Source: Oopsacas minuta (taxonomy: Eukaryota > Animalia > Porifera). From it: a stretch of 64,000 bases of DNA. The DNA lies in the NCBI GenBank assembly GCA_024704765.1, contig JAKMXF010000044.1, positions 620,001-684,000 of the forward strand. The letters are read 5' to 3'. Shown in pieces: positions 16,578-39,504 of the stretch. The position numbers and the translations under genes are program-made. Each line of letters begins with the position of its first letter. Positions within the stretch are counted from its first letter, which is position 1. Below the pieces are notes generated by a model. The model was not told where the DNA came from. It worked only from the letters and a program-made list of their open reading frames with translations, and made no database searches.

Positions 16578-19500
16578 TCACTTCATCTTTGCTTCATCTG
16601 TAATATCTTTTCTGTATTGATCGACAATCTTTTTGATTGACTTATTTGGACGGAGATCTTCTTCTTTCAGGGGTAAAAATGAGAAAGGATCATACTCGCA
16701 TCCACTCTTGATATGACTTTCAATTGCTTCCCTTTCATATGTTTCTCCTTCATTATTATTACATGGATCCACAAACAGCTCACCTGTTAGGGGACATACA
16801 TAGTCTGATTGATACATATCGCCGTCATAACTTTCAGCCTTCATTAAAATCTTCATTTTCAGATCAATTGTAGTTTTATATTGTTTAGCGTGCTTTGCCG
16901 TATAAGCCCTAGCATTAGCCGTGTACATATTAGGATTGAATTTTAGTTCAGTTGCTTTCACTGTGTCTAATGGATCGTCAGGTGCTGGATCCAGTAATAA
17001 TCCATAGACGTAATTCAAAATTTCTTTGAGTCGGATTCCCGGAGTGTAATATCGGTCTAATATTGAGTGACATACCTTCCCTGCTTGGTTTATATTGCAA
17101 TGATATATCGGAGTTATAAAGCGAATATTTGGTGGTTTAGATGGGTATTTGTCTGTGAACTCTATGAATAGGTGGAATATTCCGCCTTCATAACAAGTAT
17201 GGCTAGGTCCAGTCAAAATTAATTGCCAAAAGTCAATACTTTCTTCACAAGGAAATATTTGGAAACTTTCATGAGGTTCAGTAGCATAATACGCAAGTTC
17301 TTGTAGCAGTCGTTTTGTGTGAGTTACAGTATACACAATCTTACCTAAATGCTTCTGTCTCATGGCATATGTTAGACATTTATGCATCGTAATTGAAGGT
17401 TTTTCAAGTTTTTCAGGGGTTACATGCTCAGTGGTTTCATCGAAACTTGATGATATGTCATTCGTTAACCAACCATCACATAGTTGCTCAGTATTTAGCC
17501 CAGTCAAAAGTTGCATCATTGACATTGTATGTGAGAATTGTATATCAGCTTTATTGACCTTTCCTTTGGATTGTAATAATACAGGATCCGAATCATCACA
17601 GGGAGACAACAAGGACTTAACTTGTTTCCTCATACTTAATGTTAGCATTGGTTCATTTTCAAATATGGCCAATAGTTCTGCACATGATTTTGGCCGAAAT
17701 GAATATCCTCCAGAAGCTTTCGCTATATAATGAGTATAAGTTAACTCATTGGAGAGAATTACTGTGTCCATGATTATTCTGTGTTTGAGTAGCATGTTTG
17801 TAGCTTGCTCTGCTGTTAATTTAGACGAGTTATCATCTCCATCAGTAAGACACAGTATCCTTTTCTGTACATGAGAATACTGAGGATAAGATAAATCAAA
17901 TCCGTGAAACTCCTGAATAGCAAAATTTATAGCTTTATAAATTGCAGTCATTTGACCCGAAGGAAAGGAAGTAAATTTGTCAGAAAATTCTTTTATATTT
18001 TCTGAGATTGGATATTCGAGGGTAGAATTTTCTGTGAACAGGACTAATCCTATTGCATGTTTCAAATCGTAAGCATTTGTCCGATCTGAGAAGGCGATGA
18101 AAGCTTCAATCACAGCTTCACATCTTGTTTTGCCATTTTCATATTCATGTTTCATTGAACCACTAGTATCTAGCAATACAAGAGTAACTTCTTCGGGATC
18201 CCTCGTAAGCCTACCCATATCATCCCTAGGTTTCCTATTGCACTGCTTTAGGATATCCATACATTTCGGAGGATTGCTTTTTAATACTTTATCAAGTATA
18301 TCTACATCAAATAGATTTTCTTTACCAGTTAATACATCAAAATAAATATAATTCCTGCTTCCATCTTTCGCATCACTAATGTAAACTCCTATTTCAACAT
18401 TATTTATGGGCAACATTGCTGGTGGGGTGCATTCAGATGATTTTACAAGTAATGGTGCCTGAATACAAAGTGGTGGATAGTTTTTAAACTCGATAGTAAG
18501 TTGTTTCCACTCAGGTGTTAAATCAACGCCACAAGGATGCATTTGCACACGTTTCCACACAACAGCTTCATCTGTTAAAAAAGATGTAGTTAATCTTTTA
18601 AACCAAAGAGTTATTTCTGCATTTTCTTTTTCCCCCTTATAATATTTTTTGTCAATTATATGTTTTCCTGGAGAATTTGTTACAGCCAAAGGATTTTCTA
18701 ATTTTTTACCTGATGCATTGTCAATTAGGCTGATTGTTTCGAAATTCTCTGTATTTCCATGGTACACCTCAGCTCTCGATATCAAAAAAGCCCAGAATAA
18801 GTTAGTATACTCTGCTACCTCACTGTCTTGAACCACTGCTCCTATAAATCCCTTTTCCTTGTATTGTTTAGGTTTGATGTTTTGAAAAAGATGCATCAGG
18901 ACTTCTGTTATTGCAGCTATATGGGGTAAAGTTATATTTATCTTTGAGAACAATAAATATAGAGAATGGATTAGAGGAGGACAACCAGTGATACTTCTTA
19001 TATGCCCCAGCGTCTCTAAACATAATCTGTCATTGTTGTTTTCATACATCCAATCAGAAAGTGAATAGAGACAACTGAAGAATTGGCTTATTCCGTATTT
19101 ACTTTGCTGATTGTGCCAGCATGGGTGGTATTGTACGAAACTAAAATTATTACACCATAAAGATTCCCAAAATTCTTGTGGTGTAAAGAATTCTATGACT
19201 GAGCCTTTAATGATTGGTACATTTAGGGTACTCAATGAATGGTCAGTTGTTGGTTTAAATATCAATTCATTATTTGCTTTAATCTGAATTAGATGTGCAG
19301 GTATTCCTGTTATTTCTTGTATACTATTACACAACTCATAGTAGGTTCCTTTACAACAATTTGTTTTGATTGTATAATCAATAGTTAGGACATGTACCTT
19401 GTCCTTTCCTTTCGGTAACTTATTAGTTGTATGCATAATCTGACAATCTGTGTATATCTTAGGACGAGGTATAGCGTATAGCAATCGATTATCGTTATAT

Positions 19501-19790
19501 TCTTCTAAGCACCAGTCAGATAGTTTGCGTATATATGCCCCTGGGTAAGTAGCAAGAGGATAGCCTTCACAGCTGTACAATTCTACTGTCAGTTCTTCTC
19601 CTAAGATATCTCTTTCCCGTATGCAAATCATATTTACTAAATCATAATAACGTAATTCAGTCGTATTAATGGAGCTAATAACGTTGAGAGGTGGCTGAAG
19701 AGTTGTGAAGAGTTGATAATTGATATCCATCTTTAATCTCTTTGATTGCAGCCTCGACAGTTCTTCGATATCTTCTTCGATGGTAGGCTT
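16578..19790 (-). CDS. Paralogue 1, main exon: 2x Ubl-like - helical - vWA - UBC (E2) - U-box
   Basis: vWA LLDTSGSM...TAIYKAI...CLTDG; E2 PPNIRFITPIYHCNINQAGKVCHSIL; U-box VCPLTGELFVDP...GETYEREAI. The frame stays open 60 nt upstream of the track ATG (19730) to a phase-0 acceptor TATAATTTAG at 19791-92. Confidence 0.9.
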   Translation of the reverse strand, partial: KPTIEEDIEELSRLQSKRLKMDINYQLFTTLQPPLNVISSINTTELRYYDLVNMICIRERDILGEELTVELYSCEGYPLATYPGAYIRKLSDWCLEEYNDNRLLYAIPRPKIYTDCQIMHTTNKLPKGKDKVHVLTIDYTIKTNCCKGTYYELCNSIQEITGIPAHLIQIKANNELIFKPTTDHSLSTLNVPIIKGSVIEFFTPQEFWESLWCNNFSFVQYHPCWHNQQSKYGISQFFSCLYSLSDWMYENNNDRLCLETLGHIRSITGCPPLIHSLYLLFSKINITLPHIAAITEVLMHLFQNIKPKQYKEKGFIGAVVQDSEVAEYTNLFWAFLISRAEVYHGNTENFETISLIDNASGKKLENPLAVTNSPGKHIIDKKYYKGEKENAEITLWFKRLTTSFLTDEAVVWKRVQMHPCGVDLTPEWKQLTIEFKNYPPLCIQAPLLVKSSECTPPAMLPINNVEIGVYISDAKDGSRNYIYFDVLTGKENLFDVDILDKVLKSNPPKCMDILKQCNRKPRDDMGRLTRDPEEVTLVLLDTSGSMKHEYENGKTRCEAVIEAFIAFSDRTNAYDLKHAIGLVLFTENSTLEYPISENIKEFSDKFTSFPSGQMTAIYKAINFAIQEFHGFDLSYPQYSHVQKRILCLTDGDDNSSKLTAEQATNMLLKHRIIMDTVILSNELTYTHYIAKASGGYSFRPKSCAELLAIFENEPMLTLSMRKQVKSLLSPCDDSDPVLLQSKGKVNKADIQFSHTMSMMQLLTGLNTEQLCDGWLTNDISSSFDETTEHVTPEKLEKPSITMHKCLTYAMRQKHLGKIVYTVTHTKRLLQELAYYATEPHESFQIFPCEESIDFWQLILTGPSHTCYEGGIFHLFIEFTDKYPSKPPNIRFITPIYHCNINQAGKVCHSILDRYYTPGIRLKEILNYVYGLLLDPAPDDPLDTVKATELKFNPNMYTANARAYTAKHAKQYKTTIDLKMKILMKAESYDGDMYQSDYVCPLTGELFVDPCNNNEGETYEREAIESHIKSGCEYDPFSFLPLKEEDLRPNKSIKKIVDQYRKDITDEAKMK

Positions 19791-20795
19791 CTAAATTATA
19801 AGGATCAGCGAGAAATCAATGCATCTATATCAGTAGTTCTAACCGGTGTGACACGGCCCACTTGTGTGTCTCAGAAACTTTTTAAGCGGGCCACACTAAA
19901 GTCACTAATATACTGTCCAACCCTCCCGATTTCGTTTGCCAATCCTGACTCCCGACGCAAGTCCCGTCGGGAGCTATATAAACCCGATTTGGCGTATTAT
20001 CTCCCCATTCAATCCGATATTCTACATTGTTAATTCAATATAGATAGTCGTTAATAGTATTGTATGGATAATGAGGGATATTTAATTAAAATATGGGAGT
20101 CAACAGTTGTCATTATGTACTGATTTCTGATTATATATGATTTGACAACATATTATTATTGGCTAATAGTAATAATTACTTAGAAATTCGAATATAGCTA
20201 TCTACAAAACTGATTTTCCATATTCTGTCATAAATAATATAGCACAAATTCAAATTTGTTTACTATACGCGTATATTCATAAAAACAACAAATAAATGTA
20301 AATATGATTAATTCAAAAGTGAAAATTATATTTAGTATAGTTTATAGTATAGTTTGCTGTTTAGTATAGTATAGTATCAATCCTCTCCTTGACAACTGAC
20401 AAACAGACAGACAAAAAAATGCAATTTCATAATATAGATTTCCAAAGAATCACCTATGTATCTATACTATTCAAAAGTAATTTAGAGAGAAGTTACGATC
20501 TTTGCAAACACATTAACAAAAATTATGATGTAATTTTCATCCTTTTGAATATCGAAAATCACATTATCACACATTACTCAGCCAACATAAATGATAGAAG
20601 ATTGAAAGTTCATCATAGGCGCCCCTCAACACACCAAATGTACCGATGTCACGGTTTTACCAATTGCAAAAATCATTGGAATATTATGTCATCATTATTA
20701 TACAAAAATTAGCAAATAACATTGCAAAATTTCTGCTAGTAAGTATTCATGTGTAATTACAAAATACATTAAATTCAATCTATTAATTAACTCAC

Positions 20796-20999
20796 TTTAT
20801 AATTCTCTACCATCTTCATGAAACGATTTGCCTCTAATAATGACATTCCAATATCATTGGTCAATACATCTTTGTCTACCCCATCCAGTATATCTATTAC
20901 ATCGTGCGCGCCTTGGTTCTTGAAATTGGCGAAATATTTCCCAAAATTGTGATTTTTTAAGAATATGAATAACTCATTGTCGCTGTTTTTCGATGCCAT
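20796..20999 (-). CDS. Paralogue 1, exon 1: SAM domain
   Basis: MASKNSDNELFIFLKNHNFGKYFANFKNQ...DIGMSLLEANRFMK has the SAM pattern and ends at a canonical GTGAGT phase-0 donor (20795), in frame with the 19790 exon (~1138 aa total). Confidence 0.8.
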
Positions 21000-21702
21000 A
21001 AATATGTATGAAATAATCAAATCAATGAACAAAGTGTAGTTAGTGCCTAACAGAGTATAATGTGTCGTTATATATGCAAATTATGAATAGGCTGAATAAT
21101 ATGATACTCACTTCAATTTGGGGTCAGGATCACATTCAAGATACTAATTATATTACTTCAGTTTACTATGATTATAGGTGGATAGAGGGGTGTTCAGAGC
21201 TAAGAATTTCAGAGGCATTGTGGCTTACCCAGCATCTCTGATGAGTATGTAATAACAAGTTACTGTGAATATCACTGTTAGCTCCATAATAAGATAGGAA
21301 TTAATATTCTCTGGACAGCGTTGTATATACTAGTAGTAAGTATTGATAGGGACCACATAATTTGCACCAATTTTTTTTAGGGCTACTAGAACTCAGAAAT
21401 TATTCGAGATATCACAAGTTGGTCTTAGACCACTAGTCTTGGCTTGTTTAACCAAAATTACGAGCTTTTGCTCTAGTAACTTTAAAATGATTAGGCCGCA
21501 TGGGACGCGTAGTTACTGGAAGAGACCGGGGCCTGATCATTGGCTGTACCGTTCTGAGTATTTCCCCGAGCTGCCGCCACACATTAATCCGCACCTGGAT
21601 ATATACTATAGTATCAATTGGAATAAGCTGGTACGAGTTGATTGGTAATTATATCCGGAACTTTAAGGGAAAAATGGGTGTCGTTGCCAGTGTAGCAGTG
21701 GA

Positions 21703-23621: not shown

Positions 23622-23831
23622 ATGTCTTCCTCTGACAGCGAAATAACTGAGTTCCTTAATAAGCTAAAGTTACTCAAATACAAAGATAAGTTTAGAGAAG
23701 ATGGTCCTCATTATGTTGAGAATGTTGGAGACTTTATTCGTTTTCTTTCAGAACTGAATTTATTAAAAGAAATTGGTATGACTGTTTTCGAAGTTAACAG
23801 ATTCAAAAGACTTTGTGAAAAAACAATTGAG
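23622..23831 (+). CDS. Paralogue 2, exon 1: SAM domain
   Basis: MSSSDSEITEFLNKLKLLKYKDKFRED...EIGMTVFEVNRFKRL is SAM-like and similar to the paralogue 1 exon. Probable phase-0 donor GT at 23832 (GTTGAG, weak). Confidence 0.7.
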
Positions 23832-24726
23832 GTTGAGTTTATTACTTAGATACAAACAAACGCGAATAAATTTAATTAAGTTAAAGTACAGTAACCTTTA
23901 TATGTGGATGTATAAGTTCCCAGGAAAGCCAAAATATGAAGGCAGCTTTGATTAATGATTATAGCTTCAGCCCGATTAATACAGCTGTTGATCCTATTAA
24001 ATTTATACTTTTTGTTTGATTCTGTTAACAGCCAAGTTACCTAAATCAACTGGTAGCTCAATATGGCGGGGTTTTGAAATACTTAACCTCTTCATTTGTC
24101 CTTCAATATATTGCAATTCATTGCAATCACTTACAGTACGTAATGAATATATTCATATTTTGTTCGTTGATTCTTGTGCCCGTTTACAGTATACTCCATA
24201 CAATATTTATTGAATATAGTGATATATTGGTTATAGTGATATTTTGGCCCAAATATCTGTGTTCCCAGTGTTATCACTATATCTATTATATATTGTAAAG
24301 AGTTCAAACGGCGATCCATCATTGCGTTTTAGTTAAGGTATTTTGTAACTTACTTGAGTAATATCTAAATCATTTTAGTAAAATCTTATTTTGCTGTCTG
24401 TTTGTCCTTTCGTTTGTTTGTTTGTTCTTTCGTCGTCAAGGAAAGTATTTATAGTATGCTATTTGATTTTTAATTTCGCAATCCTGTCTATTTCGCACTG
24501 TAAGTTATCGTGTTTACTGTTAATTAAATAATATCAAATATACTGAATACAACTCTATTGAAACGATAATATGAATATTTTCAGTTAATTTTTTGAAATG
24601 TAAATAAAATTTAAATTATTAGTAGAGTTTACAGAAAAAATGGAGATTTCCAGATCTACTATTCCATCTGGAAATTTCGTGTAGAATTGGATAATTCATA
24701 TATTTCAATTCTAATATATTCCAAAG

Positions 24727-27700
24727 GAATTCGATAATGCAGAACGTATCCAAATATCCAAACCCAGAACAGAGGATAAATTCGGTGAGGCTATCAATGG
24801 AAAAGATACAGCTCCTAAATATTGCAGTGCACGATTTTCAAATTTGAACGTATTGAGAATAAGAACGAAAATATTAACCCAAGAACATATCTTAAGAAAA
24901 TCTACAGTTGTAATTACTGTTGACCTATCATGGTTGTATTACCAGTTAATTTCAATGATTCACAAATCATTACAGAGAGATGTACATGGGATTGTCTTTG
25001 AAAGTGTAGAATTATATTCTGCTACAGGATACCCATTAGCTCTGAACCCACCCAAATATTTTGAACAAATATCCAAATGGAATTTAGAACAAAATGATCT
25101 GTTGTACATTTACCCAAAGAAAATACAATCAGAGAAGATTATTTCTTATACACGATATAAGGATCCATTTCACATCAAAGTTAGAATTGAGAAGATGGAT
25201 GTTTCTATCCAAATAGAGTTACGCCATGTTGTGATATTCTGTTGTGATCTCAAAACTCTCATTTCTTTACAGCTCCATTTACCAGCAGAAATACTAACAT
25301 TGCAATTTCTTTACATTAATGACAACATAAAAGAAAAACCTGATGATAGATTGGAACTGGAGTTAAAGCAAGTTGAAGATGAACATATATTAATCTCAGT
25401 ACAAATACTAGAAAGTTTCTGGAAAGGTGATAGCTATCTGGGTGCATTCAAAAGTAGTTTATACACTAGTTGTATTCCTCAAAATATGAGTGATTGGGAT
25501 TGTTTCAATTGTTTACTTCTCTACTTATCCAGAGTTAAAACGAATATAGGCAGAGAACGCTTGTTGTCTATGCTAGGTCTTGTCCGTAGAATATCTTGTT
25601 CTCCTCCTTTAGTATTATCACTACATAGATTGCTCAACGAATCTAAACTATATCTCCCTCACAGAGTTGCTATTAATGAAGGTATCATCACCACTCTGTC
25701 TCTTCTCATTTCGGAATCTAATCCTGGAATAGAGAATTTCTCTATGTTTTGGATGTATTTAGAAAAGTATGCAGAGAATAAACATAAAGATACAGAAGTA
25801 TACGAGACACAATATATCTCGAAATACACTAGAGAGAGCCCTAAGGATCATGAAATAAAGAAACTACTACAAGCTTTCCCAGAAGCAGAAGATGTCATTG
25901 TCACTTGGAGAAACTGTCCTTCTGCTTATGAGCCATTTCTATACAGAGGATTATCTGTAACAGAATTCTCACAAAACAAAATTATGCAAAGATTCCCACT
26001 GAAACATCCCATTGAATTATACCAAGAATTCATCAATAACGGTGATAATTATGGGTTGTTACGGCCACCATCACAACTCAGTAGTTATTATATATTCCTC
26101 GGTCGTACAAAGGGAAGGTATGGATATTTCGACTTCTTTAATCCTAATGATGGAGAACGTGTTTCATGGAATCCTCAAGATAAAATCACTTCAGAAAATC
26201 TGCATATTGAAAACACCAAACAATACCAAATGCTGATAATCATCCTAGATATCAGTAAGGACATGGATTACGGATGTTATGAATATTCTGCTGGGCGTGA
26301 TGCTAAAGAACCAAACCTAATAACTAGTTCTTTAGAAATGGCATTAAGGATAATTGAACTGCTTGTGGACAGTTTGATAGGTTTGAATTGTAAATATTTG
26401 CTAAGTATTATTCTCATATCTAATAGTCACCAACAATTCATACGTGGCGTCAATGTGTTTCAACCGCTTACATTAGAATATGTTAAGACATTGCACAGAT
26501 TGAGAGAATTTTTAGAGACAACCCCTTTAAATGAGAATCCTTACAAGCGCAAGCCTTCACAAGGTATAATTGTTAACGCATTATTCCTTTTAGTAGATGA
26601 ATTTAAGCCATACGAGAATACTACTCAAGTTTTTCTACTTACAAATCATTATTCTGAACGTAAGTACTATGGTTCTAAACAAAACAGTATAGTACAGAAA
26701 TTGACTCATCATAAATTCGTATTAAATGCATTAATCTTATCTGATCATAAGTCTCACAATTTGTCAGAAATATGTGCAGCTACCAAAGGGAAATATTTCG
26801 ATCAGATCAATATAACAAATTTACAACAAAGTCACGAGAAAATATCCTCACACTATTTACTGGAATATTCTTCCCTAATTCAAGATATTGTAAATCCGTT
26901 AAACTTGGATAGCTATAAGATGATACTTTCTGATTTCAGTAAGAAACTCTCAAGCTCTGAGTCTGTATTAGAATCAGCTCAAACAAAAAAAGAAAAAGTA
27001 TATACTTATTTATTTCAATCCAAGAAGATTCCAAACATAATATACATATTAAAGCTTATATCCAACTACCTCAGAAGCCCTAATCCTTATTGTAAGATAT
27101 ATTCAATACATGATAATATTCTAAATTGGATTACTATCATCCAAGGACCTGAAAATTCTCCTTATCAAAAATCAATAATGTTTTTAGAATTCAGTTTTGG
27201 AATAGATTTCCCACGAAAACCTCCAACATTTCGTTTCCTCTCCTATCACTACCATCCAAATATCAGAAAAACTGGAGAAATTTGTCATCCCATCATAATT
27301 GAAGATTATCATCCTAATATTACTCTGAGACAGATGCTAGATTCTATATACGATATGCTATGTTTTCCTATTCCTTCTCACGCTGTCAGGTACAAAGTAT
27401 TTGAGATTTTTGTATTCTATTTTGATGTATTTAAAAGATTAGTAGAATCGTTTATAGAAGTTTTCGGATCACATTTAACCTTAACTGATTGTTTGCAAGA
27501 TTTATGTATCAAAGAATCATTGAATGTTCATCCAGAGCCATTTCTCTGTCCTCTCACAGGAGAATTATTCGACTCACCAATGATTACCCGAGAAGGTGAT
27601 TCCTATGAGCGTCATGCTATCCTACAGCATCTGAAACATCATCAATATGATCCTCTCACTAAAAAAATTCCTCTAACAGAAGCTGACTTAATACCGAATA

Positions 27701-27771
27701 CTGCATTGTTGAGTGCTGTTCATAAGTACAGAAAAAAGTGTTGTGAAAAAGAATACTGGTGGGAGCATTAA
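24727..27771 (+). CDS. Paralogue 2, main exon: 2x Ubl-like - helical - degenerate vWA - UBC (E2) - U-box
   Basis: ELYSATGYPL motif shared with paralogues 1 and 3; ILDISKDM; PPTFRFLSYHYHPNIRKTGEICHPI; FLCPLTGELFDSP...GDSYERHAI. The frame is open upstream of the track TTG (24844) to an acceptor CCAAAG at 24725-26. Confidence 0.88.
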   Translation, partial: EFDNAERIQISKPRTEDKFGEAINGKDTAPKYCSARFSNLNVLRIRTKILTQEHILRKSTVVITVDLSWLYYQLISMIHKSLQRDVHGIVFESVELYSATGYPLALNPPKYFEQISKWNLEQNDLLYIYPKKIQSEKIISYTRYKDPFHIKVRIEKMDVSIQIELRHVVIFCCDLKTLISLQLHLPAEILTLQFLYINDNIKEKPDDRLELELKQVEDEHILISVQILESFWKGDSYLGAFKSSLYTSCIPQNMSDWDCFNCLLLYLSRVKTNIGRERLLSMLGLVRRISCSPPLVLSLHRLLNESKLYLPHRVAINEGIITTLSLLISESNPGIENFSMFWMYLEKYAENKHKDTEVYETQYISKYTRESPKDHEIKKLLQAFPEAEDVIVTWRNCPSAYEPFLYRGLSVTEFSQNKIMQRFPLKHPIELYQEFINNGDNYGLLRPPSQLSSYYIFLGRTKGRYGYFDFFNPNDGERVSWNPQDKITSENLHIENTKQYQMLIIILDISKDMDYGCYEYSAGRDAKEPNLITSSLEMALRIIELLVDSLIGLNCKYLLSIILISNSHQQFIRGVNVFQPLTLEYVKTLHRLREFLETTPLNENPYKRKPSQGIIVNALFLLVDEFKPYENTTQVFLLTNHYSERKYYGSKQNSIVQKLTHHKFVLNALILSDHKSHNLSEICAATKGKYFDQINITNLQQSHEKISSHYLLEYSSLIQDIVNPLNLDSYKMILSDFSKKLSSSESVLESAQTKKEKVYTYLFQSKKIPNIIYILKLISNYLRSPNPYCKIYSIHDNILNWITIIQGPENSPYQKSIMFLEFSFGIDFPRKPPTFRFLSYHYHPNIRKTGEICHPIIIEDYHPNITLRQMLDSIYDMLCFPIPSHAVRYKVFEIFVFYFDVFKRLVESFIEVFGSHLTLTDCLQDLCIKESLNVHPEPFLCPLTGELFDSPMITREGDSYERHAILQHLKHHQYDPLTKKIPLTEADLIPNTALLSAVHKYRKKCCEKEYWWEH

Positions 27772-32480: not shown

Positions 32481-32849
32481 TCCTATATATATATTAATTG
32501 CGTTTTAATAGTATAGATGGCAGTGCTCGACGAATCCAGTGCTTTGGTGGCTATAGCCACCAGAATTTTTTCTTAAGCCACCAAAAAATATTGTATTTTG
32601 GCTTAGTAATGCTAGATGGTGGATAGTCATCAATTTTGTCGAGCGCTGATAGATGGGTCATTATCAGGGCTCTCAAGTCTCAACCTGGAAACTTCGTCAT
32701 AAATTTCAACATTTTATCGTGATACATGCAATTTAGGTACTAATTAGTTTTCTATAGTATTTGTATACTCGAAATCGTGAGAGTTGAGACCCCTGCATTA
32801 TAATTGTTGGACATACGTATGCTCCATTACAGCAGTTTATTTCAACAGC

Positions 32850-34088
32850 ATGGCTGAGAGGAAGTATGATTTGCTCCTCTACAACACTAACAAGTATAAT
32901 CAAGATCAGCCTAAGCCTCAGCCATGGTACAAAGAGCGTATACAAACTAAATTCCTACAGGCACACCGATCACTAGCACTTGATTCTTCTCAATGGAAAC
33001 TATTCAAGAACAATCCAGATGATTTTAGAGATGGAATCCCTCCCTCCTCTGAAGATATTCTATCTCCAAACTCATCTCATCTCCACCTCCCACTGATACA
33101 CATAACCAAAACACCTAACTCTATTCCATCGCCTAATTGGGAAGGGAAGAAGATAAGAAAGAAAGATGCTCTCTACTGCAGAGCTCTCCCCGCTCAACAG
33201 AAGCGTAGAGAATATATACAAGCTCTTGAGGTTGAGTTAACCTCGCATCCTACACAACTGTATCCTCATCTGATGGAGGCAATACCGCACCAGTTACAAT
33301 CTCGTTATAATGACGTCATATCTACAGACAGTTCTGCTCCTTTTACAGATAAACATAAGAGTATTACGTCACCCCTCGATTGTCCTACACCCTCCTCCTC
33401 TAAGAAATCATATCTCTCTTCAGCTACAAGTGAGGTTCAGTCAGAGATAGAATTAGGGGAGCTATACAGATTTCCTTCTCTCAAATCTACGAACAGAAGC
33501 AGATCTGTTTCCTCTGATTGTGAGCCAGTAGAGTCACGGGAAACAGATGAGCTTACTCTCCTTACTGAGGATCTATGCTCATGGGCTAATCACCTGAGTG
33601 ATAATGATGATTCCTTAGAACCCTCTCATATACGAGCTCTCTTCAGTAATACTTTTGATAACAACAAACTGGCAACTCTGGCACCAGTACAAGTTGTAGA
33701 TCTATCTAACATACCTGGAGAACTCAAAGTAACACTAATAGACACAAATGAAAGGAACGATACTCAACTCAACAAACCCTGGCAGCCGAATTCTGTCAGC
33801 TGTCAAATAGTACCTGCTAAACCTGTCCGTACCAAATACGGTGAGTGGTATATACCGGTACATTTGTGGAGAGCCCGACCTAAACACGAGCATCTTAACC
33901 TTCCCAGTATCCAGGAGCGGGAGCAGAGTAGGAAGATAGGGAGGATGGCAGAGCTAGATAAGGAGATATCAGAGTTACACAGTGCTTCTCTCTTCCTCAA
34001 ACATCTACAAAAGAAGTCATATAGTAATCAGAAGGTACATATCCCATCCTTCTTGGGGCTCAGAGAACGTAACTCTCTATCCAGCTAG
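32850..34088 (+). CDS. FAM47: FAM47-like protein
   Basis: LDSSQWKLFKNNPDDFRDG, QQKRREYIQALEVELTSHPTQLYPHL and KYGEWYIPVHLW match FAM47-family blocks. The likely start is MAERK at 32850 rather than the track's 32784. Confidence 0.7.
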   Translation: MAERKYDLLLYNTNKYNQDQPKPQPWYKERIQTKFLQAHRSLALDSSQWKLFKNNPDDFRDGIPPSSEDILSPNSSHLHLPLIHITKTPNSIPSPNWEGKKIRKKDALYCRALPAQQKRREYIQALEVELTSHPTQLYPHLMEAIPHQLQSRYNDVISTDSSAPFTDKHKSITSPLDCPTPSSSKKSYLSSATSEVQSEIELGELYRFPSLKSTNRSRSVSSDCEPVESRETDELTLLTEDLCSWANHLSDNDDSLEPSHIRALFSNTFDNNKLATLAPVQVVDLSNIPGELKVTLIDTNERNDTQLNKPWQPNSVSCQIVPAKPVRTKYGEWYIPVHLWRARPKHEHLNLPSIQEREQSRKIGRMAELDKEISELHSASLFLKHLQKKSYSNQKVHIPSFLGLRERNSLSS

Positions 34089-34775: not shown

Positions 34776-35717
34776 ATGTCTGAGTCTACGCATAAGAAGA
34801 GCATTGAATTGATAGACGCAATAGAAGCTATTCTACAACACAAATCATGTCCTCTCTCACTCGACTATCTATCTCTTAAACTACAGAAGAAGTATACTAT
34901 GAAATCAGTTCAGAGGACAGCATTCGTTAACATGGTACATACTGAAATATCAAAATATCCGCACAGAATATATTCTATTGAGAATGGACTGTATGTACTC
35001 GCTAATCCTCCGCTACATGAGCGTAGTACTCTCATCCTACCTGAGACTCAAAGTAACGTGTATTCAGAATCTGAATCTACTCGTAGTGACTCTGTACAGG
35101 TACCAGGTTGTGATGAAGAGCTGGAGATTTACCGACTGACACAGGAAGTAGCTTTGCTTAGAGAAGTTACCACCGGCTGTCTGGCATGGAATCACAGTCT
35201 AGTTGGAGTTATTAGTGATCGTAGGAGAGAACTACAAGAGGTAAATACAGACGTGAATCTGTTACTCGCATATCATCATACTATGAAGGAGACTAAACCA
35301 AAGAGTTATCCTCACAAGAAGAAATATAACAAGAAATACGGAAAGAGTACCAGGAAGTTATCTGCTTCTGGGAAGAGAAATAAAAAACGGATAATGGCCT
35401 CAGAAAGAAAGCACAAACTTAAAGTTATGTCTGTCAAGAAATCCAAATTAAATTCTACTTCAAAGAATCCTATATCTTCTCCTTATAAGCTCAATTCCCG
35501 TAGAAATTCTCCTCAATCAAGTGAGGAGTTTCCCTCTAATCATAACTCTCAGACTAATTCTTCTGGAGCTACTAATTACACTATACCATGTCATTCTCCT
35601 TCCCCTACCCCACTCTTAGATACCACTGATAATTCTGAATCTGTAATTCCTACAATATTTGACGAGAATTCTACTTCTAACAACAAGGAAGATATTACTT
35701 CAAGTGATTCTGATTAA
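34776..35717 (+). CDS. Protein with N-terminal HARE-HTH-like winged helix, coiled coil, and Lys- and Ser-rich tail (313 aa)
   Basis: LIDAIEAILQHKSCPLS...MVHTEISKYPHRIYSIENGLYVL follows the ASXL/HARE-HTH pattern by eye; the basic tail is NLS-like. Confidence 0.5.
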   Translation: MSESTHKKSIELIDAIEAILQHKSCPLSLDYLSLKLQKKYTMKSVQRTAFVNMVHTEISKYPHRIYSIENGLYVLANPPLHERSTLILPETQSNVYSESESTRSDSVQVPGCDEELEIYRLTQEVALLREVTTGCLAWNHSLVGVISDRRRELQEVNTDVNLLLAYHHTMKETKPKSYPHKKKYNKKYGKSTRKLSASGKRNKKRIMASERKHKLKVMSVKKSKLNSTSKNPISSPYKLNSRRNSPQSSEEFPSNHNSQTNSSGATNYTIPCHSPSPTPLLDTTDNSESVIPTIFDENSTSNNKEDITSSDSD

Positions 35718-36042: not shown

Positions 36043-39000
36043 ATGTCATTTGATAAAGTCGTAGAGTTCCTAACTGAACTCCGCTTGCAAACCTTTGCTG
36101 ATAAATTTGGAGATTTGGGAGTGACTATACTAGCAGATCTTAAATATGTTCAGGAGGAAGATCTAGATGCGATGGGGATGAAGAAGATACATAAAAATAA
36201 GTTTTTACAAAATATTAGTAAGATTACTGACTTTGTAGTAGAAAAGCCCAGTGTTCCTGTGGTACCTTCAGCCCCTCCTATTATCCCTGTCATCGTTCCC
36301 AGTGCCCCAGTTCTCAGTTCACCAATCCCCAATGCACCTGTACCTGTACCCATATCAGCACCTGTGCCGAGTGCACCACCCCCGAGTGGAGCTACTCCCA
36401 TAGCGGAGGCAATATCAATCGTGTCTGGCTCCAACTTCCTAAACTACCACATCTACAGATCTCTCCAGCCGGAGCGCAGAGACATAACAGGACTAGATTT
36501 TGAGCATACTACCTACGGACAGTTGAAACAGCTGATTAGTGACCAGGAAAAATTAGGAACTAGTGTAACTGTTGAATTATTCGCTCCCGAAGGCTATCCT
36601 CTAGCTCCAGACACACATAACTACGATAAGAGTCTAAAGGAATGGCATTTCTCAGACGGAGACCTCATCCTCGCCATTCCATGCAGAGCTAGCATGGTTA
36701 AGATTCAGACCCTCCCTGAACTGCACCCAGATACAGGAGATACACAAATATTCGTAAAATATAACCGTACATACGTCATCAATGTAGATATGGCTACTGA
36801 TACTGGTAATACCGTTAGACAGAAGTTATATAGTAAATTACAGATACCTACTCCCTCTATCAAGCTATCATATGCTGGTAAGCCTATCAAGCCTGACAAT
36901 ACTCTACTACAGGATTACGGAGTATGTAAGAACTCTACACTACATATGTGGTTCTACGGAGTAACCTGGGTTAACTCATGGGCTCAAAACTTCTCTTCTC
37001 GTCTCTGTCTTCCTCTGATAGATCAGAGTGAGGAAGGTCTCTCTCTATTTAACTCAGTCCTCTATGTAGTGTCAATGCATTTCGTGTCTGAAACAACCGC
37101 GAGGATTAACAAGGTGCTGGGACACATCAGGAGGATAACAAAATGTCCTCCTCTAGTCTGTGCGCTGGACCGTCTCTTCAGGAAGAGAACTCTCTCCTTC
37201 CCTCAGAAAGTAGCTATCCAGGAATCTCTCTACCAGCTATTCAGAGCTCTTCTACCACAAGACACAGATAAACCAATAACTAATTTACATGTGTTTGAGA
37301 AGTCCAGTGAGTGCTGGGCCTTCTTAATGACTGAGAGTTTGGATTCTGACAGATATTCAGAGGAATATGCTCAGACAGACCTAACATGCTGTATCACCAA
37401 ACAGAGACTCAAAGTTCCTATCTGTCTGCCTGGATCTCAGCTCATCTACGAGAGAGAACAGATTGAAGAATGCATAAAGAACAAAGATACTATCCCTGGT
37501 GTAGATGTGAACACCATAACTCTGGGACAAATTACTGAGAGTAAGAAGTGTCTACGTCTGTTGATGAGTGTTACTGAGGAGACTGAAGCTATGGTTTGGA
37601 GCAAAGGAGGGAAGTCTCTATACGAGCTGCCTAATATACACAAACCTCAATTCAACTGTACCCCAGTAGAGTTGAAGGATAAAATGAAACAGATCAGCTG
37701 TTTAGAAGTAATACCGCCCCTCAAAATAAAATCAATCAGTAGCACATACAGACTCACTACTAACTCAGAAGGTAACGTTATTGTGTATCTAGAGAGAAAT
37801 CCTTGTGGTACACCAGGTAGTGACTGGATATTCTATGATCCTGCTCAGGGTAATGAGTGTGATAAGAATCCAGACGAGCTAGCTAACAAGGCTGGTACTA
37901 GCTCAACTGGTACCTCTTCTCTTCCTTCTTCTGGATATACTCCCGCTGCTGAGCCAATTGTAATAGTAGCAGCTCCTCCTGAGGTTATAACACGCCCTCC
38001 AGAGGAGGCTATCATTGTCCTCCTGGATGTCAGTTGGTCTATGGATGAGGAGTATGAACACGGCATGACACGCTTGCAAGCTGTTAAACAGCTGTTCCAC
38101 GCGTTTGCTAACAGATCCATGGCTTATAACCTGCACAATGTGATAGGACTTACTCTGTTCGCTACTGACATAAAGGTACACTCTAGAGTAACAGAGCTGT
38201 TTGAGAGGTTCAAACAGAAAGTTGATATTGTAATGGCAGAAGGTAGGACCAAACTTTATGACGCTATTATAGAAGGTATTAGACAGCTAACAGAGTTCAT
38301 GGAGAAATATAAGGAATGTAGGAAGAGGATTATTTGTCTCACGGACGGAGAGGACTGTCTTTCTAAGAAGACCCCTCTCCATACAGCTAGACTAGCTCTA
38401 GAGAACCAAGTGATAGTAGACTCCATACTTATAGGGAGTGGTAATCGTAAGATGAAAGCTATCTCTATGGCTAGTGGGGGGTGCTGCTTCCTGCCCCCCT
38501 CTCTCACAGAGGCTCTCAAACTGTTCGAGATGGAGGAAGTTCTTACTCTAGCAAATCGTCAGATAAAACCTCTGTGTCAGCTAGACCTACTCACTGAGTC
38601 TCTCCTCCGTAGAATTGAGAATCCTACTCTCTACAAATATAATGAGAAACCTCCTCGTTTAATCCCTCAAGAGCTTGATGCTCCTGTCGTGTCAGTACGT
38701 ACTAAGCTACAGAGAGCAGCTAATGGACCTGTCCTCACCCCAGGGGGCGGGGGAGAAGAGAGAAGGGTCAGGAGGATACTGAAGGAACTCTCTATCATGC
38801 AGCGAGAGAAACATCCTAACCTAGAGCTATATCCTAATGAGAATGACGTAGGTTTCTGGCGTATGTTATTAACAGGCCCAGAGTTCACGCCCTACCAGAG
38901 TGCGGTATTCCTCCTCTACGTACGGTTCCCCCTCAACTATCCGGAGGGTCCCCCTGAGATCCGCTTCATCACACCTATCTACCACTGTAACATCAACAGC

Positions 39001-39504
39001 AGTGGACGTATTTGTCACAGTGTGTTCGGCAGGAACTACACTAGTGACATGGAGTTCAGAGCACTTATGGATTGTGTGTTCGGACTATTGTGTGAACCTG
39101 AGCCCGGGGATCCTCTGGACAGTAACATGGCCGAGGAATACTTCAGTCGTAGACAGGAGTATAATCAGATGGCTGAGAATTGGTGTGTACATCACTGTAA
39201 GAAGCAACTAGAGGTGTGGAGAGCTGAGTTCGTGTCTGAGGAAGAAGCAGCTCATTCTATTATTCCTGCTAGTATTGTATGCCCTCTCTGTGCTGAGATA
39301 TTCTTAGATCCAGTACAAACTCCGTATGGAAACACTTATGAAAGACAGGCTATAGAGGACCATATAGATGCGGAAGGGAATGACCCCTTAGCTTACAAAC
39401 CCCTCACCAAGGACCAATTATCCCCTAATCTCGACAAGAAGCGAGAAGTGTCCCAGTACAATCAGGAATGTAATATCACTGGCTGGTGGGATGCAGCACA
39501 CTAA
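36043..39504 (+). CDS. Paralogue 3 (intronless): SAM - Pro-rich linker - 2x Ubl - helical - U-box-like - vWA - UBC (E2) - U-box, 1153 aa
   Basis: SAM FLTELRLQTFADKF...MGMKKIHKNKF; Ubl TQIFVKY...KLSYAGKPIKPDNTLLQDYGVCKNSTLHM; vWA LLDVSWSM...TKLYDAI...CLTDG; E2 PPEIRFITPIYHCNINSSGRICHSV; U-box VCPLCAEIFLDPVQTPYGNTYERQAI. Confidence 0.93.
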   Translation: MSFDKVVEFLTELRLQTFADKFGDLGVTILADLKYVQEEDLDAMGMKKIHKNKFLQNISKITDFVVEKPSVPVVPSAPPIIPVIVPSAPVLSSPIPNAPVPVPISAPVPSAPPPSGATPIAEAISIVSGSNFLNYHIYRSLQPERRDITGLDFEHTTYGQLKQLISDQEKLGTSVTVELFAPEGYPLAPDTHNYDKSLKEWHFSDGDLILAIPCRASMVKIQTLPELHPDTGDTQIFVKYNRTYVINVDMATDTGNTVRQKLYSKLQIPTPSIKLSYAGKPIKPDNTLLQDYGVCKNSTLHMWFYGVTWVNSWAQNFSSRLCLPLIDQSEEGLSLFNSVLYVVSMHFVSETTARINKVLGHIRRITKCPPLVCALDRLFRKRTLSFPQKVAIQESLYQLFRALLPQDTDKPITNLHVFEKSSECWAFLMTESLDSDRYSEEYAQTDLTCCITKQRLKVPICLPGSQLIYEREQIEECIKNKDTIPGVDVNTITLGQITESKKCLRLLMSVTEETEAMVWSKGGKSLYELPNIHKPQFNCTPVELKDKMKQISCLEVIPPLKIKSISSTYRLTTNSEGNVIVYLERNPCGTPGSDWIFYDPAQGNECDKNPDELANKAGTSSTGTSSLPSSGYTPAAEPIVIVAAPPEVITRPPEEAIIVLLDVSWSMDEEYEHGMTRLQAVKQLFHAFANRSMAYNLHNVIGLTLFATDIKVHSRVTELFERFKQKVDIVMAEGRTKLYDAIIEGIRQLTEFMEKYKECRKRIICLTDGEDCLSKKTPLHTARLALENQVIVDSILIGSGNRKMKAISMASGGCCFLPPSLTEALKLFEMEEVLTLANRQIKPLCQLDLLTESLLRRIENPTLYKYNEKPPRLIPQELDAPVVSVRTKLQRAANGPVLTPGGGGEERRVRRILKELSIMQREKHPNLELYPNENDVGFWRMLLTGPEFTPYQSAVFLLYVRFPLNYPEGPPEIRFITPIYHCNINSSGRICHSVFGRNYTSDMEFRALMDCVFGLLCEPEPGDPLDSNMAEEYFSRRQEYNQMAENWCVHHCKKQLEVWRAEFVSEEEAAHSIIPASIVCPLCAEIFLDPVQTPYGNTYERQAIEDHIDAEGNDPLAYKPLTKDQLSPNLDKKREVSQYNQECNITGWWDAAH

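What the first reader, a model, noticed from the sequence alone, without database searches (positions are those of the whole stretch)
26215..27400. Paralogue 2 has a UBE2L3/UbcH7-like E2 active site and a degenerate vWA MIDAS
Established: UBE2D uses D87 (C-L-D) and D117 (PDDPL) for lysine aminolysis, whereas lysine-unreactive UBE2L3 has Pro and His at these positions (CLP; PEHPLR). Seen: paralogue 2 reads ICHP (Cys codon 27283) and PSHAVR (His codon 27379), i.e. Pro and His. Paralogues 1 and 3 read CHS and PDDPL/PGDPL, keeping the second Asp. Paralogue 2 also loses its MIDAS (DISKD, no Thr, LTNH instead of LTDG), which is intact in 1 and 3. Inference: functional specialisation toward Cys transfer or non-lysine substrates, or a decoy/regulator paired with paralogue 1. 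This is unusual because a U-box normally depends on a lysine-reactive E2.
Basis: partly seen in the sequence, partly recalled or inferred. Interest (0 to 1): 0.7.

Follow-up and report, generated by a model that had tools for sequence, protein, structure and literature searches.

The report
Sponge ligase pair with altered E2
In a glass sponge, one of two neighbouring single-chain ubiquitin E2 plus U-box ligase genes has independently evolved the active-site residues of the lysine-unreactive human enzyme UBE2L3 and a remodelled vWA domain; both changes are conserved across its relatives, but the biochemistry is untested.

Summary
Paralogue 2 is Oopsacas minuta LOD99_14352. It aligns without gaps to UBE2D3, with Pro at D87 and His at D117. 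Its MIDAS reads DISKD…I…N, against DxSxS…T…D in paralogues 1 and 3.

These changes are not decay. About 29 "type B" homologues, down to 33% identity, keep the catalytic Cys, HPN, C-H-P, [S/T]H-x-V-R, DISxDM and LTN. The gene is spliced and transcribed.

The match to UBE2L3 is convergent and covers four cleft positions (P, E, H, R). The domain itself is nearer UBE2D, and a true UBE2L3 gene lies elsewhere in the genome.

Every type B gene sits next to a canonical "type A" gene: five of five loci here, seven of eight elsewhere. The two clades mirror each other.

Type A belongs to a widespread, unstudied eukaryotic vWA-UBC-U-box family. Its ancestral state is HCN, C-H-S and PEPxDPLD.

The type B vWA-like domain is the most variable part of the protein, with two deep lineages shared between two assemblies.

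Lysine-inertness and A-B partnership are inferences and remain untested. The scan had already noted this gene family and the A/B pairing on other pieces of this genome. The active-site convergence and the variable domain are new here.

The parts
23622..23831 (+). Paralogue 2 (type B), exon 1: SAM domain, 70 codons
   Evidence: It matches the N-terminus of P0001/LOD99_14352. A spliced contig in run X4 joins 23829/23831 to 24725/24727.
23832..24726 (+). Intron of paralogue 2 (895 nt, GT..AG)
   Evidence: the joint skips 895 nt. Contig depth is about 16 in the intron and about 320-450 in the exons of X4.
24727..27771 (+). Paralogue 2 exon 2: Ubl/helical N-part, vWA-like domain, UBC, U-box (1014 codons plus stop)
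   Evidence: Open frame. 100% identity to the 1084-aa P0001.
26209..26916 (+). vWA-like domain with remodelled MIDAS (DISKD at 26248-26262; QGIIVNA with Ile for Thr at 26560-26580; LTN with Asn codon at 26644)
   Evidence: No Pfam VWA hit. It aligns column by column with the vWA of paralogues 1 and 3. The AF2 model has pLDDT 83 and pTM 0.86. Foldseek hits vWA domains of TFIIH p44/p34, Ku, Rpn10, vWF-A1 and RGLG1.
27049..27486 (+). UBC (E2) domain: HPN 27253-27261, Cys 27283, His 27286, Pro 27289, Glu-Asp 27301-27306, His 27379, Arg 27388
   Evidence: Pfam UQ_con 83.7 bits against a cut-off of 27. Ungapped alignment to UBE2D3. Foldseek TM 0.85-0.91 and rmsd 1.4-1.7 A to UbcH5 structures.
27532..27735 (+). 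U-box domain of paralogue 2
   Evidence: Pfam U-box 53.6 bits against a cut-off of 21.4.
16578..21032 (-). Paralogue 1 (type A partner, LOD99_14351): main exon 16578-19730 plus SAM exon within 20787-21032, head-to-head with paralogue 2
   Evidence: Pfam VWA_2, UQ_con and U-box. P0033 matches at 100%. SAM ORF. Motifs HCN, CHS, PDDPL and LDTSGSM.
36043..39504 (+). Paralogue 3: slow-evolving singleton with SAM-Ubl-vWA-UBC-U-box
   Evidence: Pfam. Orthologues are 80-87% identical. It branches on the type A side of the tree.

Best explanation
Paralogue 2 is the 'type B' half of a conserved two-gene unit in glass sponges. Both halves descend from an old eukaryotic family of single-chain vWA-UBC-U-box proteins.

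Type A (paralogue 1) keeps the family's canonical features: a metal-site vWA (DxSxS, T, D) and a cleft with Asp at the D117 position.

Type B keeps everything needed to carry ubiquitin as a thioester: the invariant Cys, the HPN motif, the intact UBC fold and the U-box. It has rebuilt the cleft to the UBE2L3 pattern, with Pro at D87, Glu at S91, His at D117 and Arg at V120.

By analogy with UBE2L3 and with UBE2D3 D117A and D87 mutants, I infer three things. Type B~Ub cannot be attacked by lysine. Its own U-box cannot activate it for aminolysis. It therefore discharges only to a thiol or another non-lysine nucleophile, or it holds ubiquitin as a regulated partner of the adjacent type A enzyme.

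Its vWA-like domain keeps the fold but has a remodelled, probably metal-independent site. The rest of that domain's sequence is highly variable, so I read it as a protein-recognition module.

Shown here: the residues, their conservation, the convergence, the fold, transcription, the linkage and the co-duplication. Inferred: the reactivity, physical A-B partnership and the role of the variable domain.
For: - **Residue placement.**
- **Conservation.** Over ~29 homologues down to 33% identity, H913, N915 and C923 are invariant, and P914, H924, P925, H955 and V957 are at least 90% conserved. DISxDM and LTN are conserved as well.
- **Selection.** dN/dS is about 0.2-0.4 in all three parts of the gene in comparisons between the two assemblies.
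- **Expression.** Spliced transcript evidence.
- **Convergence.** The UBC domain scores higher against the sponge's UBE2D (87 bits) than its UBE2L3 (63 bits). A true UBE2L3 gene lies at G000:C44:711637. Types A and B each fall on one side of a branch (100* and 98*).
- **Where A and B differ.** 11 of the 22 columns that discriminate A from B fall in 55 columns around the MIDAS and the E2 cleft.
- **Linkage.** 5 of 5 type B genes in this genome adjoin a type A gene, in three different orientations. 7 of 8 loci in other assemblies show the A(-)/B(+) pair.
- **Co-divergence.** A and B distance matrices mirror each other, r 0.98.
- **Literature.** UBE2L3 has His119 in place of D117 and lacks lysine reactivity (PMC8899012). 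D117A ablates transfer to Lys but not Cys, and N77/D87 are needed for the closed E2~Ub state used by allosteric E3s (bioRxiv 10.1101/2025.09.05.674436). UBE2L3 does not discharge on lysine (bioRxiv 10.1101/2023.03.05.531151).
- **vWA fold.**
Against: - No biochemical data exist for any member of the family.
- The whole family, including presumably active type A, lacks Asp at the D87 position (Ser in 92 of 135 representatives). It also has Asp or Asn at the L104 position. Rules learned on UBE2D may therefore not transfer.
- Type B has a conserved acidic Glu-Asp pair next to the cleft that could substitute for D117.
- From memory, not checked here: reverting the two residues in UBE2L3 does not restore lysine reactivity, so these residues are markers rather than sole determinants.
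- Physical A-B interaction was not tested, because the complex prediction was not run by the tool.
- Linkage can persist without functional coupling.
Confidence: 0.5

Rival explanations
1. Type B is still a lysine-reactive E2/E3 hybrid. The cleft has been rebuilt with other residues doing the work of D117: the conserved Glu-Asp after the Cys, the His next to the Cys, and His955 as a base. On this view the change tunes substrate or chain specificity rather than nucleophile class.
For: The family as a whole already departs from UBE2D at D87 (Ser), at the HPN proline (Cys) and at L104, yet it is conserved from ciliates to fish. Type B has a conserved E929-D930 pair and an apparent charge swap relative to type A (R..D in A, E..R in B). 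The U-box is retained under selection, which makes most sense if it activates an E2.
Against: D117A alone ablates lysine transfer in UBE2D3. The four-position match to the one well-studied lysine-inert E2 would then be coincidence. Pro at D87 removes a side chain that the closed state needs.
Confidence: 0.25
2. Type B is a non-catalytic regulator or decoy, a UEV-like partner. It binds ubiquitin, E1 or the type A protein but does not pass ubiquitin on, and so modulates type A's chain type or activity.
For: Obligate linkage to type A. It evolves about 1.4 times faster than A. Precedent: Ubc13 with Uev1a/Mms2, and the vWA protein MERIT40 binding the UEV domains of BRE (from memory). The vWA profile gives weak hits to BABAM1, E 0.012.
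Against: True UEVs have lost the catalytic Cys. Here Cys, His and Asn of the active site are invariant in all ~29 sequences, which implies selection for thioester chemistry.
Confidence: 0.15
3. Paralogue 2 is a decaying duplicate whose active-site and MIDAS changes are neutral damage.
For: Pfam no longer recognises its vWA. It is the most divergent of the three paralogues, at 28-32% identity. One type B copy in this genome (C111b) is fragmentary.
Against: It has an intact 1084-codon reading frame in a 33% G+C genome. It gives a spliced transcript. The same derived residues recur in ~29 homologues across several assemblies. dN/dS is about 0.2-0.4. The AF2 models are confident: mean pLDDT 76.5 for the whole protein, with a UBC domain that superposes on UbcH5, and 83 for the vWA-like domain.
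Confidence: 0.02

Closest known systems
UBE2L3 / UbcH7 (and UBE2L6)
   Same: Pro two residues after the catalytic Cys. An acidic Glu before the aromatic residue of the loop. His at the UBE2D D117 position and Arg three residues later (CLP..EN-W..EHPLR against CHP..ED-Y..SHAVR). HPN and the catalytic Cys are retained.
   Different: It is not an orthologue. It scores 63 bits against the sponge's own UBE2L3 and 87 bits against UBE2D, and a true UBE2L3 gene exists elsewhere in the genome. Type B has His rather than Leu after the Cys, lacks the one-residue loop insertion, has A-V instead of P-L after the His, and is embedded in a 1084-aa SAM-Ubl-vWA-UBC-U-box chain. Its reactivity is untested.
UBE2D (UbcH5) family
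   Same: Closest solved relatives by sequence (E 1.5e-22, ungapped) and by fold (TM 0.85-0.91, rmsd 1.4-1.7 A). HPN, Cys and Phe62 are kept.
   Different: D87, D116, D117, N114 and L104 are all replaced (P, S, H, I, D). Trp93 is Tyr.
Eukaryotic vWA-UBC-U-box family (unnamed; for example Coilia grayii KAL2078640.1 and Blepharisma stoltei CAG9312007.1; vWA-UBC matches also in Chromera and Cyanophora proteins)
   Same: Same domain order and the shared C-H dyad. Paralogues 1 and 3 carry the family consensus HCN, C-H-S, PEPxDPLD and an intact MIDAS.
   Different: Type B is a derived clade inside this family, with HPN, C-H-P, S-H-x-V-R and DxSxD..I/G..N. So far I have seen it only in glass-sponge-like assemblies. 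I found no paper on the family.
Active E2 plus variant-E2 pairs (Ubc13 with Uev1a/Mms2) and the vWA-UEV contact of MERIT40-BRE in BRISC/BRCA1-A
   Same: A canonical and a non-canonical UBC-fold protein working as a unit, and a vWA domain associated with a UBC fold. The vWA profile gives weak hits to BABAM1. The rest is from memory.
   Different: UEVs lack the catalytic Cys, and type B keeps it. Here both partners also carry their own U-box and vWA, and the partnership is inferred from linkage only.
E2/E3 hybrids UBE2O and BIRC6; vWA-RING ligases RGLG1/2 and TFIIH p44/Ssl1
   Same: E2 and E3 functions in a single chain, or a vWA domain fused to a RING-type E3. The RGLG1 and p44 vWA domains are among the structural matches.
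   Different: None of these combines vWA, UBC and U-box, and none has a UBE2L3-like cleft. This comparison is from general knowledge apart from the fold matches.

Membership tests
UBC / E2 superfamily (Pfam PF00179) | UBC fold scoring above the curated threshold | tested here: met
   83.7 bits against a cut-off of 27. Foldseek TM 0.85-0.91 to UbcH5 structures.
UBC / E2 superfamily (Pfam PF00179) | Catalytic Cys and HPN motif | tested here: met
   HPN at 27253-27261 and Cys at 27283. H, N and C are invariant in 31 sequences.
UBE2L3/UbcH7 orthologue group | Closest relative among E2s is UBE2L3 (orthology) | tested here: not met
   Best PDB and own-genome hits are UBE2D. It clusters with type A vWA-UBC-U-box proteins. 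The true UBE2L3 gene is at G000:C44:711637.
UBE2L3/UbcH7 orthologue group | Pro at D87 and His at D117 (UBE2D numbering) | tested here: met
   Glu and Arg also match at two further positions.
UBE2L3-like function | No E3-independent discharge to lysine; discharge to thiols only | not testable with these tools
   Needs single-turnover discharge assays.
U-box (Pfam PF04564) | U-box domain scoring above threshold | tested here: met
   53.6 bits against a cut-off of 21.4, ORF residues 897-964.
vWA domain | Sequence-profile membership (Pfam VWA / VWA_2) | tested here: not met
   No hit at E <= 0.01 for paralogue 2, and none precomputed for any type B homologue.
vWA domain | Alternating beta-alpha Rossmann-like vWA fold | tested here: met
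   AF2 pLDDT 83 and pTM 0.86. Foldseek E 1e-9 to 1e-6 against TFIIH p44/p34, Ku, Rpn10, vWF-A1 and RGLG1. Column-wise homology to type A vWA.
vWA domain | Complete MIDAS: DxSxS, Thr, Asp | tested here: not met
   The site reads D-I-S-K-D, Ile/Gly in place of Thr, and Asn in place of Asp. Two of five ligands are kept. The substitutes are conserved in type B.
Eukaryotic vWA-UBC-U-box family | Domain order vWA, UBC, U-box in one chain, with the C-H dyad at the active site | tested here: met
   His follows the Cys in 121 of 135 representatives.
Eukaryotic vWA-UBC-U-box family | Family consensus HCN, C-H-S, PEPxDPLD | tested here: not met
   Type B reads HPN, C-H-P and PxxSHAVR. It is therefore a derived subgroup, not a typical member.

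The most novel reading that the evidence does not exclude
The A/B pairs are a polymorphic recognition-and-tagging system of glass sponges, possibly for self/non-self or pathogen recognition in these syncytial animals. In this reading, the hypervariable vWA-like domain of type B, maintained as deep allelic lineages across species, is the specificity determinant. Its lysine-inert, thiol-only E2 passes ubiquitin by transthiolation to the linked type A enzyme (or another Cys-dependent ligase), which then modifies the target. That would be an E2-to-E2 relay, a mechanism without a described precedent.
Probability: 0.1. Interest if true: 0.9.

Novelty: new variant of a known kind. Interest (0 to 1): 0.62.

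Why it matters
UBE2L3 is the textbook example of an E2 that reacts only with cysteine, and that property was used to discover RING/HECT-hybrid ligases. Here the same cleft pattern seems to have arisen independently inside an E2 that is covalently tied to a U-box, a kind of E3 that normally needs a lysine-reactive E2. That gives a natural experiment on which residues set E2 nucleophile choice.

The strict linkage to a canonical paralogue suggests a two-enzyme ubiquitin module that nobody has studied. It belongs to a protein family present from protists to fish that also has no literature.

The deep, shared lineages in the type B vWA-like domain hint at balancing selection. If confirmed, that would be one of few candidate recognition loci in glass sponges.

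None of this is biochemically tested, so at present the value is as a well-defined, cheap-to-test hypothesis.

Tried and rejected
1. **Complex prediction.** I submitted type A (P0033 593-1138) with type B (P0001 835-1084). The tool counted the job but did not fold it, under its own rule on chain origin. This says nothing about binding.
2. **RNA runs.** The search listed no run recorded as RNA. One run of unknown kind (X4) carries the spliced junction and exon-biased depth, so I take it to be RNA-derived. Only contigs were available, so transcript ends and expression levels cannot be stated.
3. **Literature.** Searches for the vWA/UBC/U-box architecture and for Oopsacas ubiquitin enzymes found nothing relevant.
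4. **Homology search with paralogue 3.** It returned only 4 proteins because low-complexity words filled the candidate list. The profile search replaced it.
5. **Pseudogene or decay reading.** Rejected; see the rival explanations.
6. **Descent of the type B UBC domain from UBE2L3.** Rejected.
7. **Whole-protein AF2 model.** I could not inspect it for U-box/UBC contacts within the chain because coordinates are not exposed. Only its secondary structure and Foldseek matches were used.
8. **Identity of the ENA assemblies.** ERZ25072730, ERZ25069837, ERZ25071281 and ERZ20067936 could not be named. One homologue source is the glass sponge Vazella pourtalesii. The rest are assumed, not shown, to be glass sponges.
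9. **Coverage of the family search.** Only the best 150 of 1210 family representatives were examined for the His state.
Full report
**What the region is.** The window comes from the glass sponge Oopsacas minuta. The 975-codon open frame at 24844-27771 is 100% identical to NCBI protein LOD99_14352 (P0001, 1084 aa).

The full gene has two exons. Exon 1 (23622-23831) encodes a SAM domain. An 895-nt GT..AG intron follows. Exon 2 runs from 24727 to 27771.

One public run of unrecorded type (X4) contains a contig that joins the two exons exactly. Its contig depth is about 320-450 over the exons and about 16 over the intron. I take this as evidence that the gene is transcribed and spliced as annotated. 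Only contigs were available, so nothing can be said about transcript ends or expression level.

Pfam finds UQ_con (83.7 bits) and U-box (53.6 bits) in paralogue 2 but no vWA. Paralogues 1 (16578-19730, minus strand; LOD99_14351) and 3 (36043-39504) have VWA_2, UQ_con and U-box. Paralogue 3 also has SAM and ubiquitin-like domains.

HMMER aligns the E2 domain to UBE2D3 with no gap from helix 1 to beyond the D117 loop (E 1.5e-22). The alignment gives C85=Cys, L86=His, D87=Pro, D116=Ser, D117=His, P118=Ala and L119=Val. HPN is kept.

A MAFFT alignment that includes the sponge's own UBE2D and UBE2L3 genes gives the same placement. The whole-protein AlphaFold model (mean pLDDT 76.5) has a UBC domain that superposes on UbcH5 structures at TM 0.85-0.91 and rmsd 1.4-1.7 A over about 140 columns. 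The sequence alignment is therefore structurally sound.

Paralogues 1 and 3 read HCN, CHS and PDDPL/PGDPL, with an intact DxSxS, Thr and LTDG.

**Not decay: a conserved derived clade.** A search with paralogue 2 found 31 homologues at 34-63% identity. In the roughly 29 that align over the relevant parts, the following are kept:
- the catalytic Cys and the H and N of HPN (invariant);
- Pro after C-x (three sequences read CLP or CVP);
- the [S/T]-H-x-V-[R/x] loop;
- DISxDM, GII-x-NAL, LTN, and a type-specific KYYGSK motif.

I call these type B.

A search with paralogue 1 found 41 homologues. Those that span the motifs nearly all read HCN, C-H-[S/T/K..], P-[D/E]-D-P-L-D and LDTSGSM. I call these type A.

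In a tree of 61 full-length sequences, A and B each fall on one side of a branch (SH-aLRT 98 and 100). Paralogue 3 joins the A side on a long branch. This was a quick search with a midpoint root, and the tool warns that long branches meet there.

In comparisons between the two assemblies, dN/dS for type B genes is 0.2-0.4 in all three parts of the gene.

Of the 22 alignment columns that are at least 90% conserved within each type but differ between them, 11 lie in 55 columns around the three MIDAS motifs and the E2 cleft. About 1.2 would be expected. I defined those windows after seeing the data, so the p-value of 3e-9 is only indicative.

**The resemblance to UBE2L3 is wider than reported, and convergent.** Besides Pro (D87) and His (D117), type B shares two more residues with UBE2L3: a Glu before the loop aromatic (…ED-Y against …EN-W) and an Arg three residues after the His (SHAVR against EHPLR). 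Relative to type A, the last two changes look like a charge swap: R…D in A and E…R in B.

The domain is nevertheless not a UBE2L3 descendant, on three grounds:
- It scores 87 bits against the sponge's UBE2D and 63 bits against its UBE2L3, as do types A and 3.
- Its sister group is type A, with the same multidomain architecture.
- A true UBE2L3 gene (CLP…EHPLR) lies about 28 kb beyond the window's end, at G000:C44:711637.

**The wider family.** A profile of A, B and paralogue 3 finds 1210 representatives at E <= 1e-30. The best 150 nearly all match across the vWA and UBC region, and many reach the U-box as well. Named members include a teleost and a ciliate protein that match over almost their full length, and vWA-UBC matches in Chromera velia and Cyanophora paradoxa proteins. 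The ESM Atlas has a 458-member cluster with this architecture in which chordates are the commonest phylum. I found no paper on it.

Among 135 representatives with the cleft aligned:
- the HPN proline is Cys in 86;
- His follows the catalytic Cys in 121;
- the D87 position is Ser in 92, Pro in 16 and Asp in 1;
- the D117 position is Asp in 114 and His in 7, of which six are type B and one (P0217) is independent.

Absence of Asp at D87 is a property of the whole family. What is specific to type B is Pro there, the Asp-to-His change, and the E/R pair.

**Linkage to a canonical partner.** In this genome every type B gene is adjacent to a type A gene:

| Locus | Arrangement |
|---|---|
| C44 (this window) | head-to-head |
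| C19 | head-to-head |
| C111 | two convergent pairs; the second has a fragmentary B |
| C222 | tandem |

The two paralogue-3-like genes (C44 and C210) are singletons.

In other assemblies, seven of eight loci inspected show A(-)/B(+) head-to-head (L028, L029, L031, L042-L045). The eighth (L030) shows two B genes, with an A gene elsewhere on the contig. The order A, B, FAM47-like, one further gene, paralogue 3 seen in the window recurs in L044 and L045.

Subclades of A and B share contigs, and their distance matrices correlate (r 0.98 overall, 0.94 within the pair-1 clade). The pair has evidently been duplicated and inherited as a unit. Within-clade correlation is expected for any two genes that follow the species tree, so the informative part is the matched deep split. 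B evolves about 1.4 times faster than A.

One homologue source is the glass sponge Vazella pourtalesii. The unnamed ENA assemblies are assumed to be glass sponges.

Other agents of this scan had already described the family and the unequal A/B pair on other pieces of this genome. My results agree with theirs.

**The vWA-like domain.** The type B region (P0001 562-800) folds confidently (pLDDT 83, pTM 0.86). It matches vWA domains, best those that act as metal-independent protein-binding modules: TFIIH p44/p34, Ku, Rpn10 and vWF-A1, plus RGLG1. A profile of A and B regions hits bacterial BatA/BatB-type vWA domains (E 7e-8), with the MIDAS columns aligned as expected. It hits BABAM1/MERIT40 weakly.

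Two of the five MIDAS ligands remain, and the replacements are conserved. "Remodelled" describes the site better than "degenerate".

This domain is also the most variable part of type B. In close pairs it is 50-67% identical where the rest of the protein is 92-98% identical. In type A pairs the vWA is among the best conserved regions.

Two assemblies each hold two copies of the locus, with flanks about 98% identical:

| Comparison | Region | dS |
|---|---|---|
| Within an assembly | N-terminal part and UBC + U-box | 0.03-0.09 |
| Within an assembly | vWA-like region | 0.49-0.70 |
| Between assemblies | rest of the gene | 0.27-0.30 |
| Between assemblies, same lineage (P0002 with P0004; P0003 with P0005) | vWA-like region | 0.40 |

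The vWA-like sequences thus sort into two lineages shared between the assemblies, at dN/dS of about 0.3-0.4. Either these are old alleles maintained across species, or they are old paralogues whose remaining sequence is homogenised. I cannot tell which. In either case diversity in this domain is being retained.

**Mechanism.** Established knowledge bears on this as follows:
- UBE2L3 has His119 where UBE2D has D117, and it lacks lysine reactivity (PMC8899012; bioRxiv 10.1101/2023.03.05.531151).
- UBE2D3 D117A loses transfer to lysine but not to cysteine.
- N77 and D87 are needed for the closed E2~Ub state that RING and U-box ligases exploit (bioRxiv 10.1101/2025.09.05.674436).

My best reading, at about 50%, has three parts. 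Type B is charged normally but is inert to lysine and not activatable by its own U-box. It acts by thiol or other non-lysine transfer, or as a ubiquitin-holding partner, together with the linked lysine-competent type A. Its variable vWA-like domain supplies recognition.

The rivals are:
- a rebuilt but still lysine-reactive cleft (about 25%), supported by the family-wide departure from UBE2D rules and by the conserved Glu-Asp pair;
- a non-catalytic regulator (about 15%), weakened by the invariant Cys, His and Asn;
- decay (about 2%), contradicted by the evidence above.

The attempt to predict an A-B complex was not run by the tool.

**Verdict.** This is a convergent, clade-wide UBE2L3-like cleft in the derived half of a conserved two-gene E2/U-box unit, and the altered vWA is a conserved-motif, hypervariable-body domain rather than a relic. 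I class it as a new variant of a known kind. The function remains to be tested at the bench.

Noticed in passing
L042:10001-13012 vs L043:10001-13036; L044:10001-13033 vs L045:10001-13039: In two other assemblies, the two copies of the pair-1 locus are about 98% identical in their flanks. They differ by 30-50% of residues in the type B vWA-like domain only (dS 0.5-0.7). Two domain lineages are shared across the assemblies. This is either trans-species polymorphism or old paralogues with concerted evolution elsewhere in the gene.
   Followed up: partly
G000:C299:84603-84878 (L026): A free-standing 162-aa E2 carries the family's unusual HCN motif (FHCNINSEGRVCTQL). It is 36% identical (93 bits) to the paralogue 1 UBC domain. 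It may be a stand-alone relative of the fused E2.
   Followed up: no
G000:C44:711637-711945 (L022), about 28 kb beyond the window end: The sponge's true UBE2L3 orthologue (CLPLIAPENW…EHPLR) lies on the same contig as the three paralogues.
   Followed up: partly
window 36043-39504, protein residues 443-483: Paralogue 3 has a sub-threshold zf-Nse/SP-RING-like match (23.8 bits against a cut-off of 27) in its N-terminal half. The sequence looks like a second, degenerate U-box-like motif. Paralogues 1 and 2 have lost it.
   Followed up: no
P0217 (1154 aa, unnamed representative): A family member outside type B, with intact MIDAS, HCN and C-H-A, reads PEPDHPLD. This is an independent Asp-to-His change at the D117 position.
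   Followed up: no
G000:C111:1220838-1223388 (L033): The second type B copy on contig C111 is split into four short frames and lacks most of its UBC domain. Its type A neighbour has an in-frame stop. This is probably a decaying duplicate of the adjacent pair.
   Followed up: partly
G000:C19:65879-65906 (L002/L003) and P0023: The C19 type B gene is in two overlapping frames. The NCBI model (P0023) has an aberrant N-terminal half of the UBC domain in the alignment. That suggests a mis-called short intron or a frameshift in the annotation.
   Followed up: no
window 32784-34088 and 34776-35717: Two open frames lie between paralogues 2 and 3. The first has the position and size (434 aa) of a gene with a FAM47 hit that holds the same place in L044 and L045, so the whole five-gene block appears syntenic across assemblies. 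I did not compare the window frames themselves with those genes.
   Followed up: partly
L042:5554-5958 and L043:4800-5237: A hAT-transposase dimerisation-domain fragment sits between the type A and type B genes in one other assembly.
   Followed up: no
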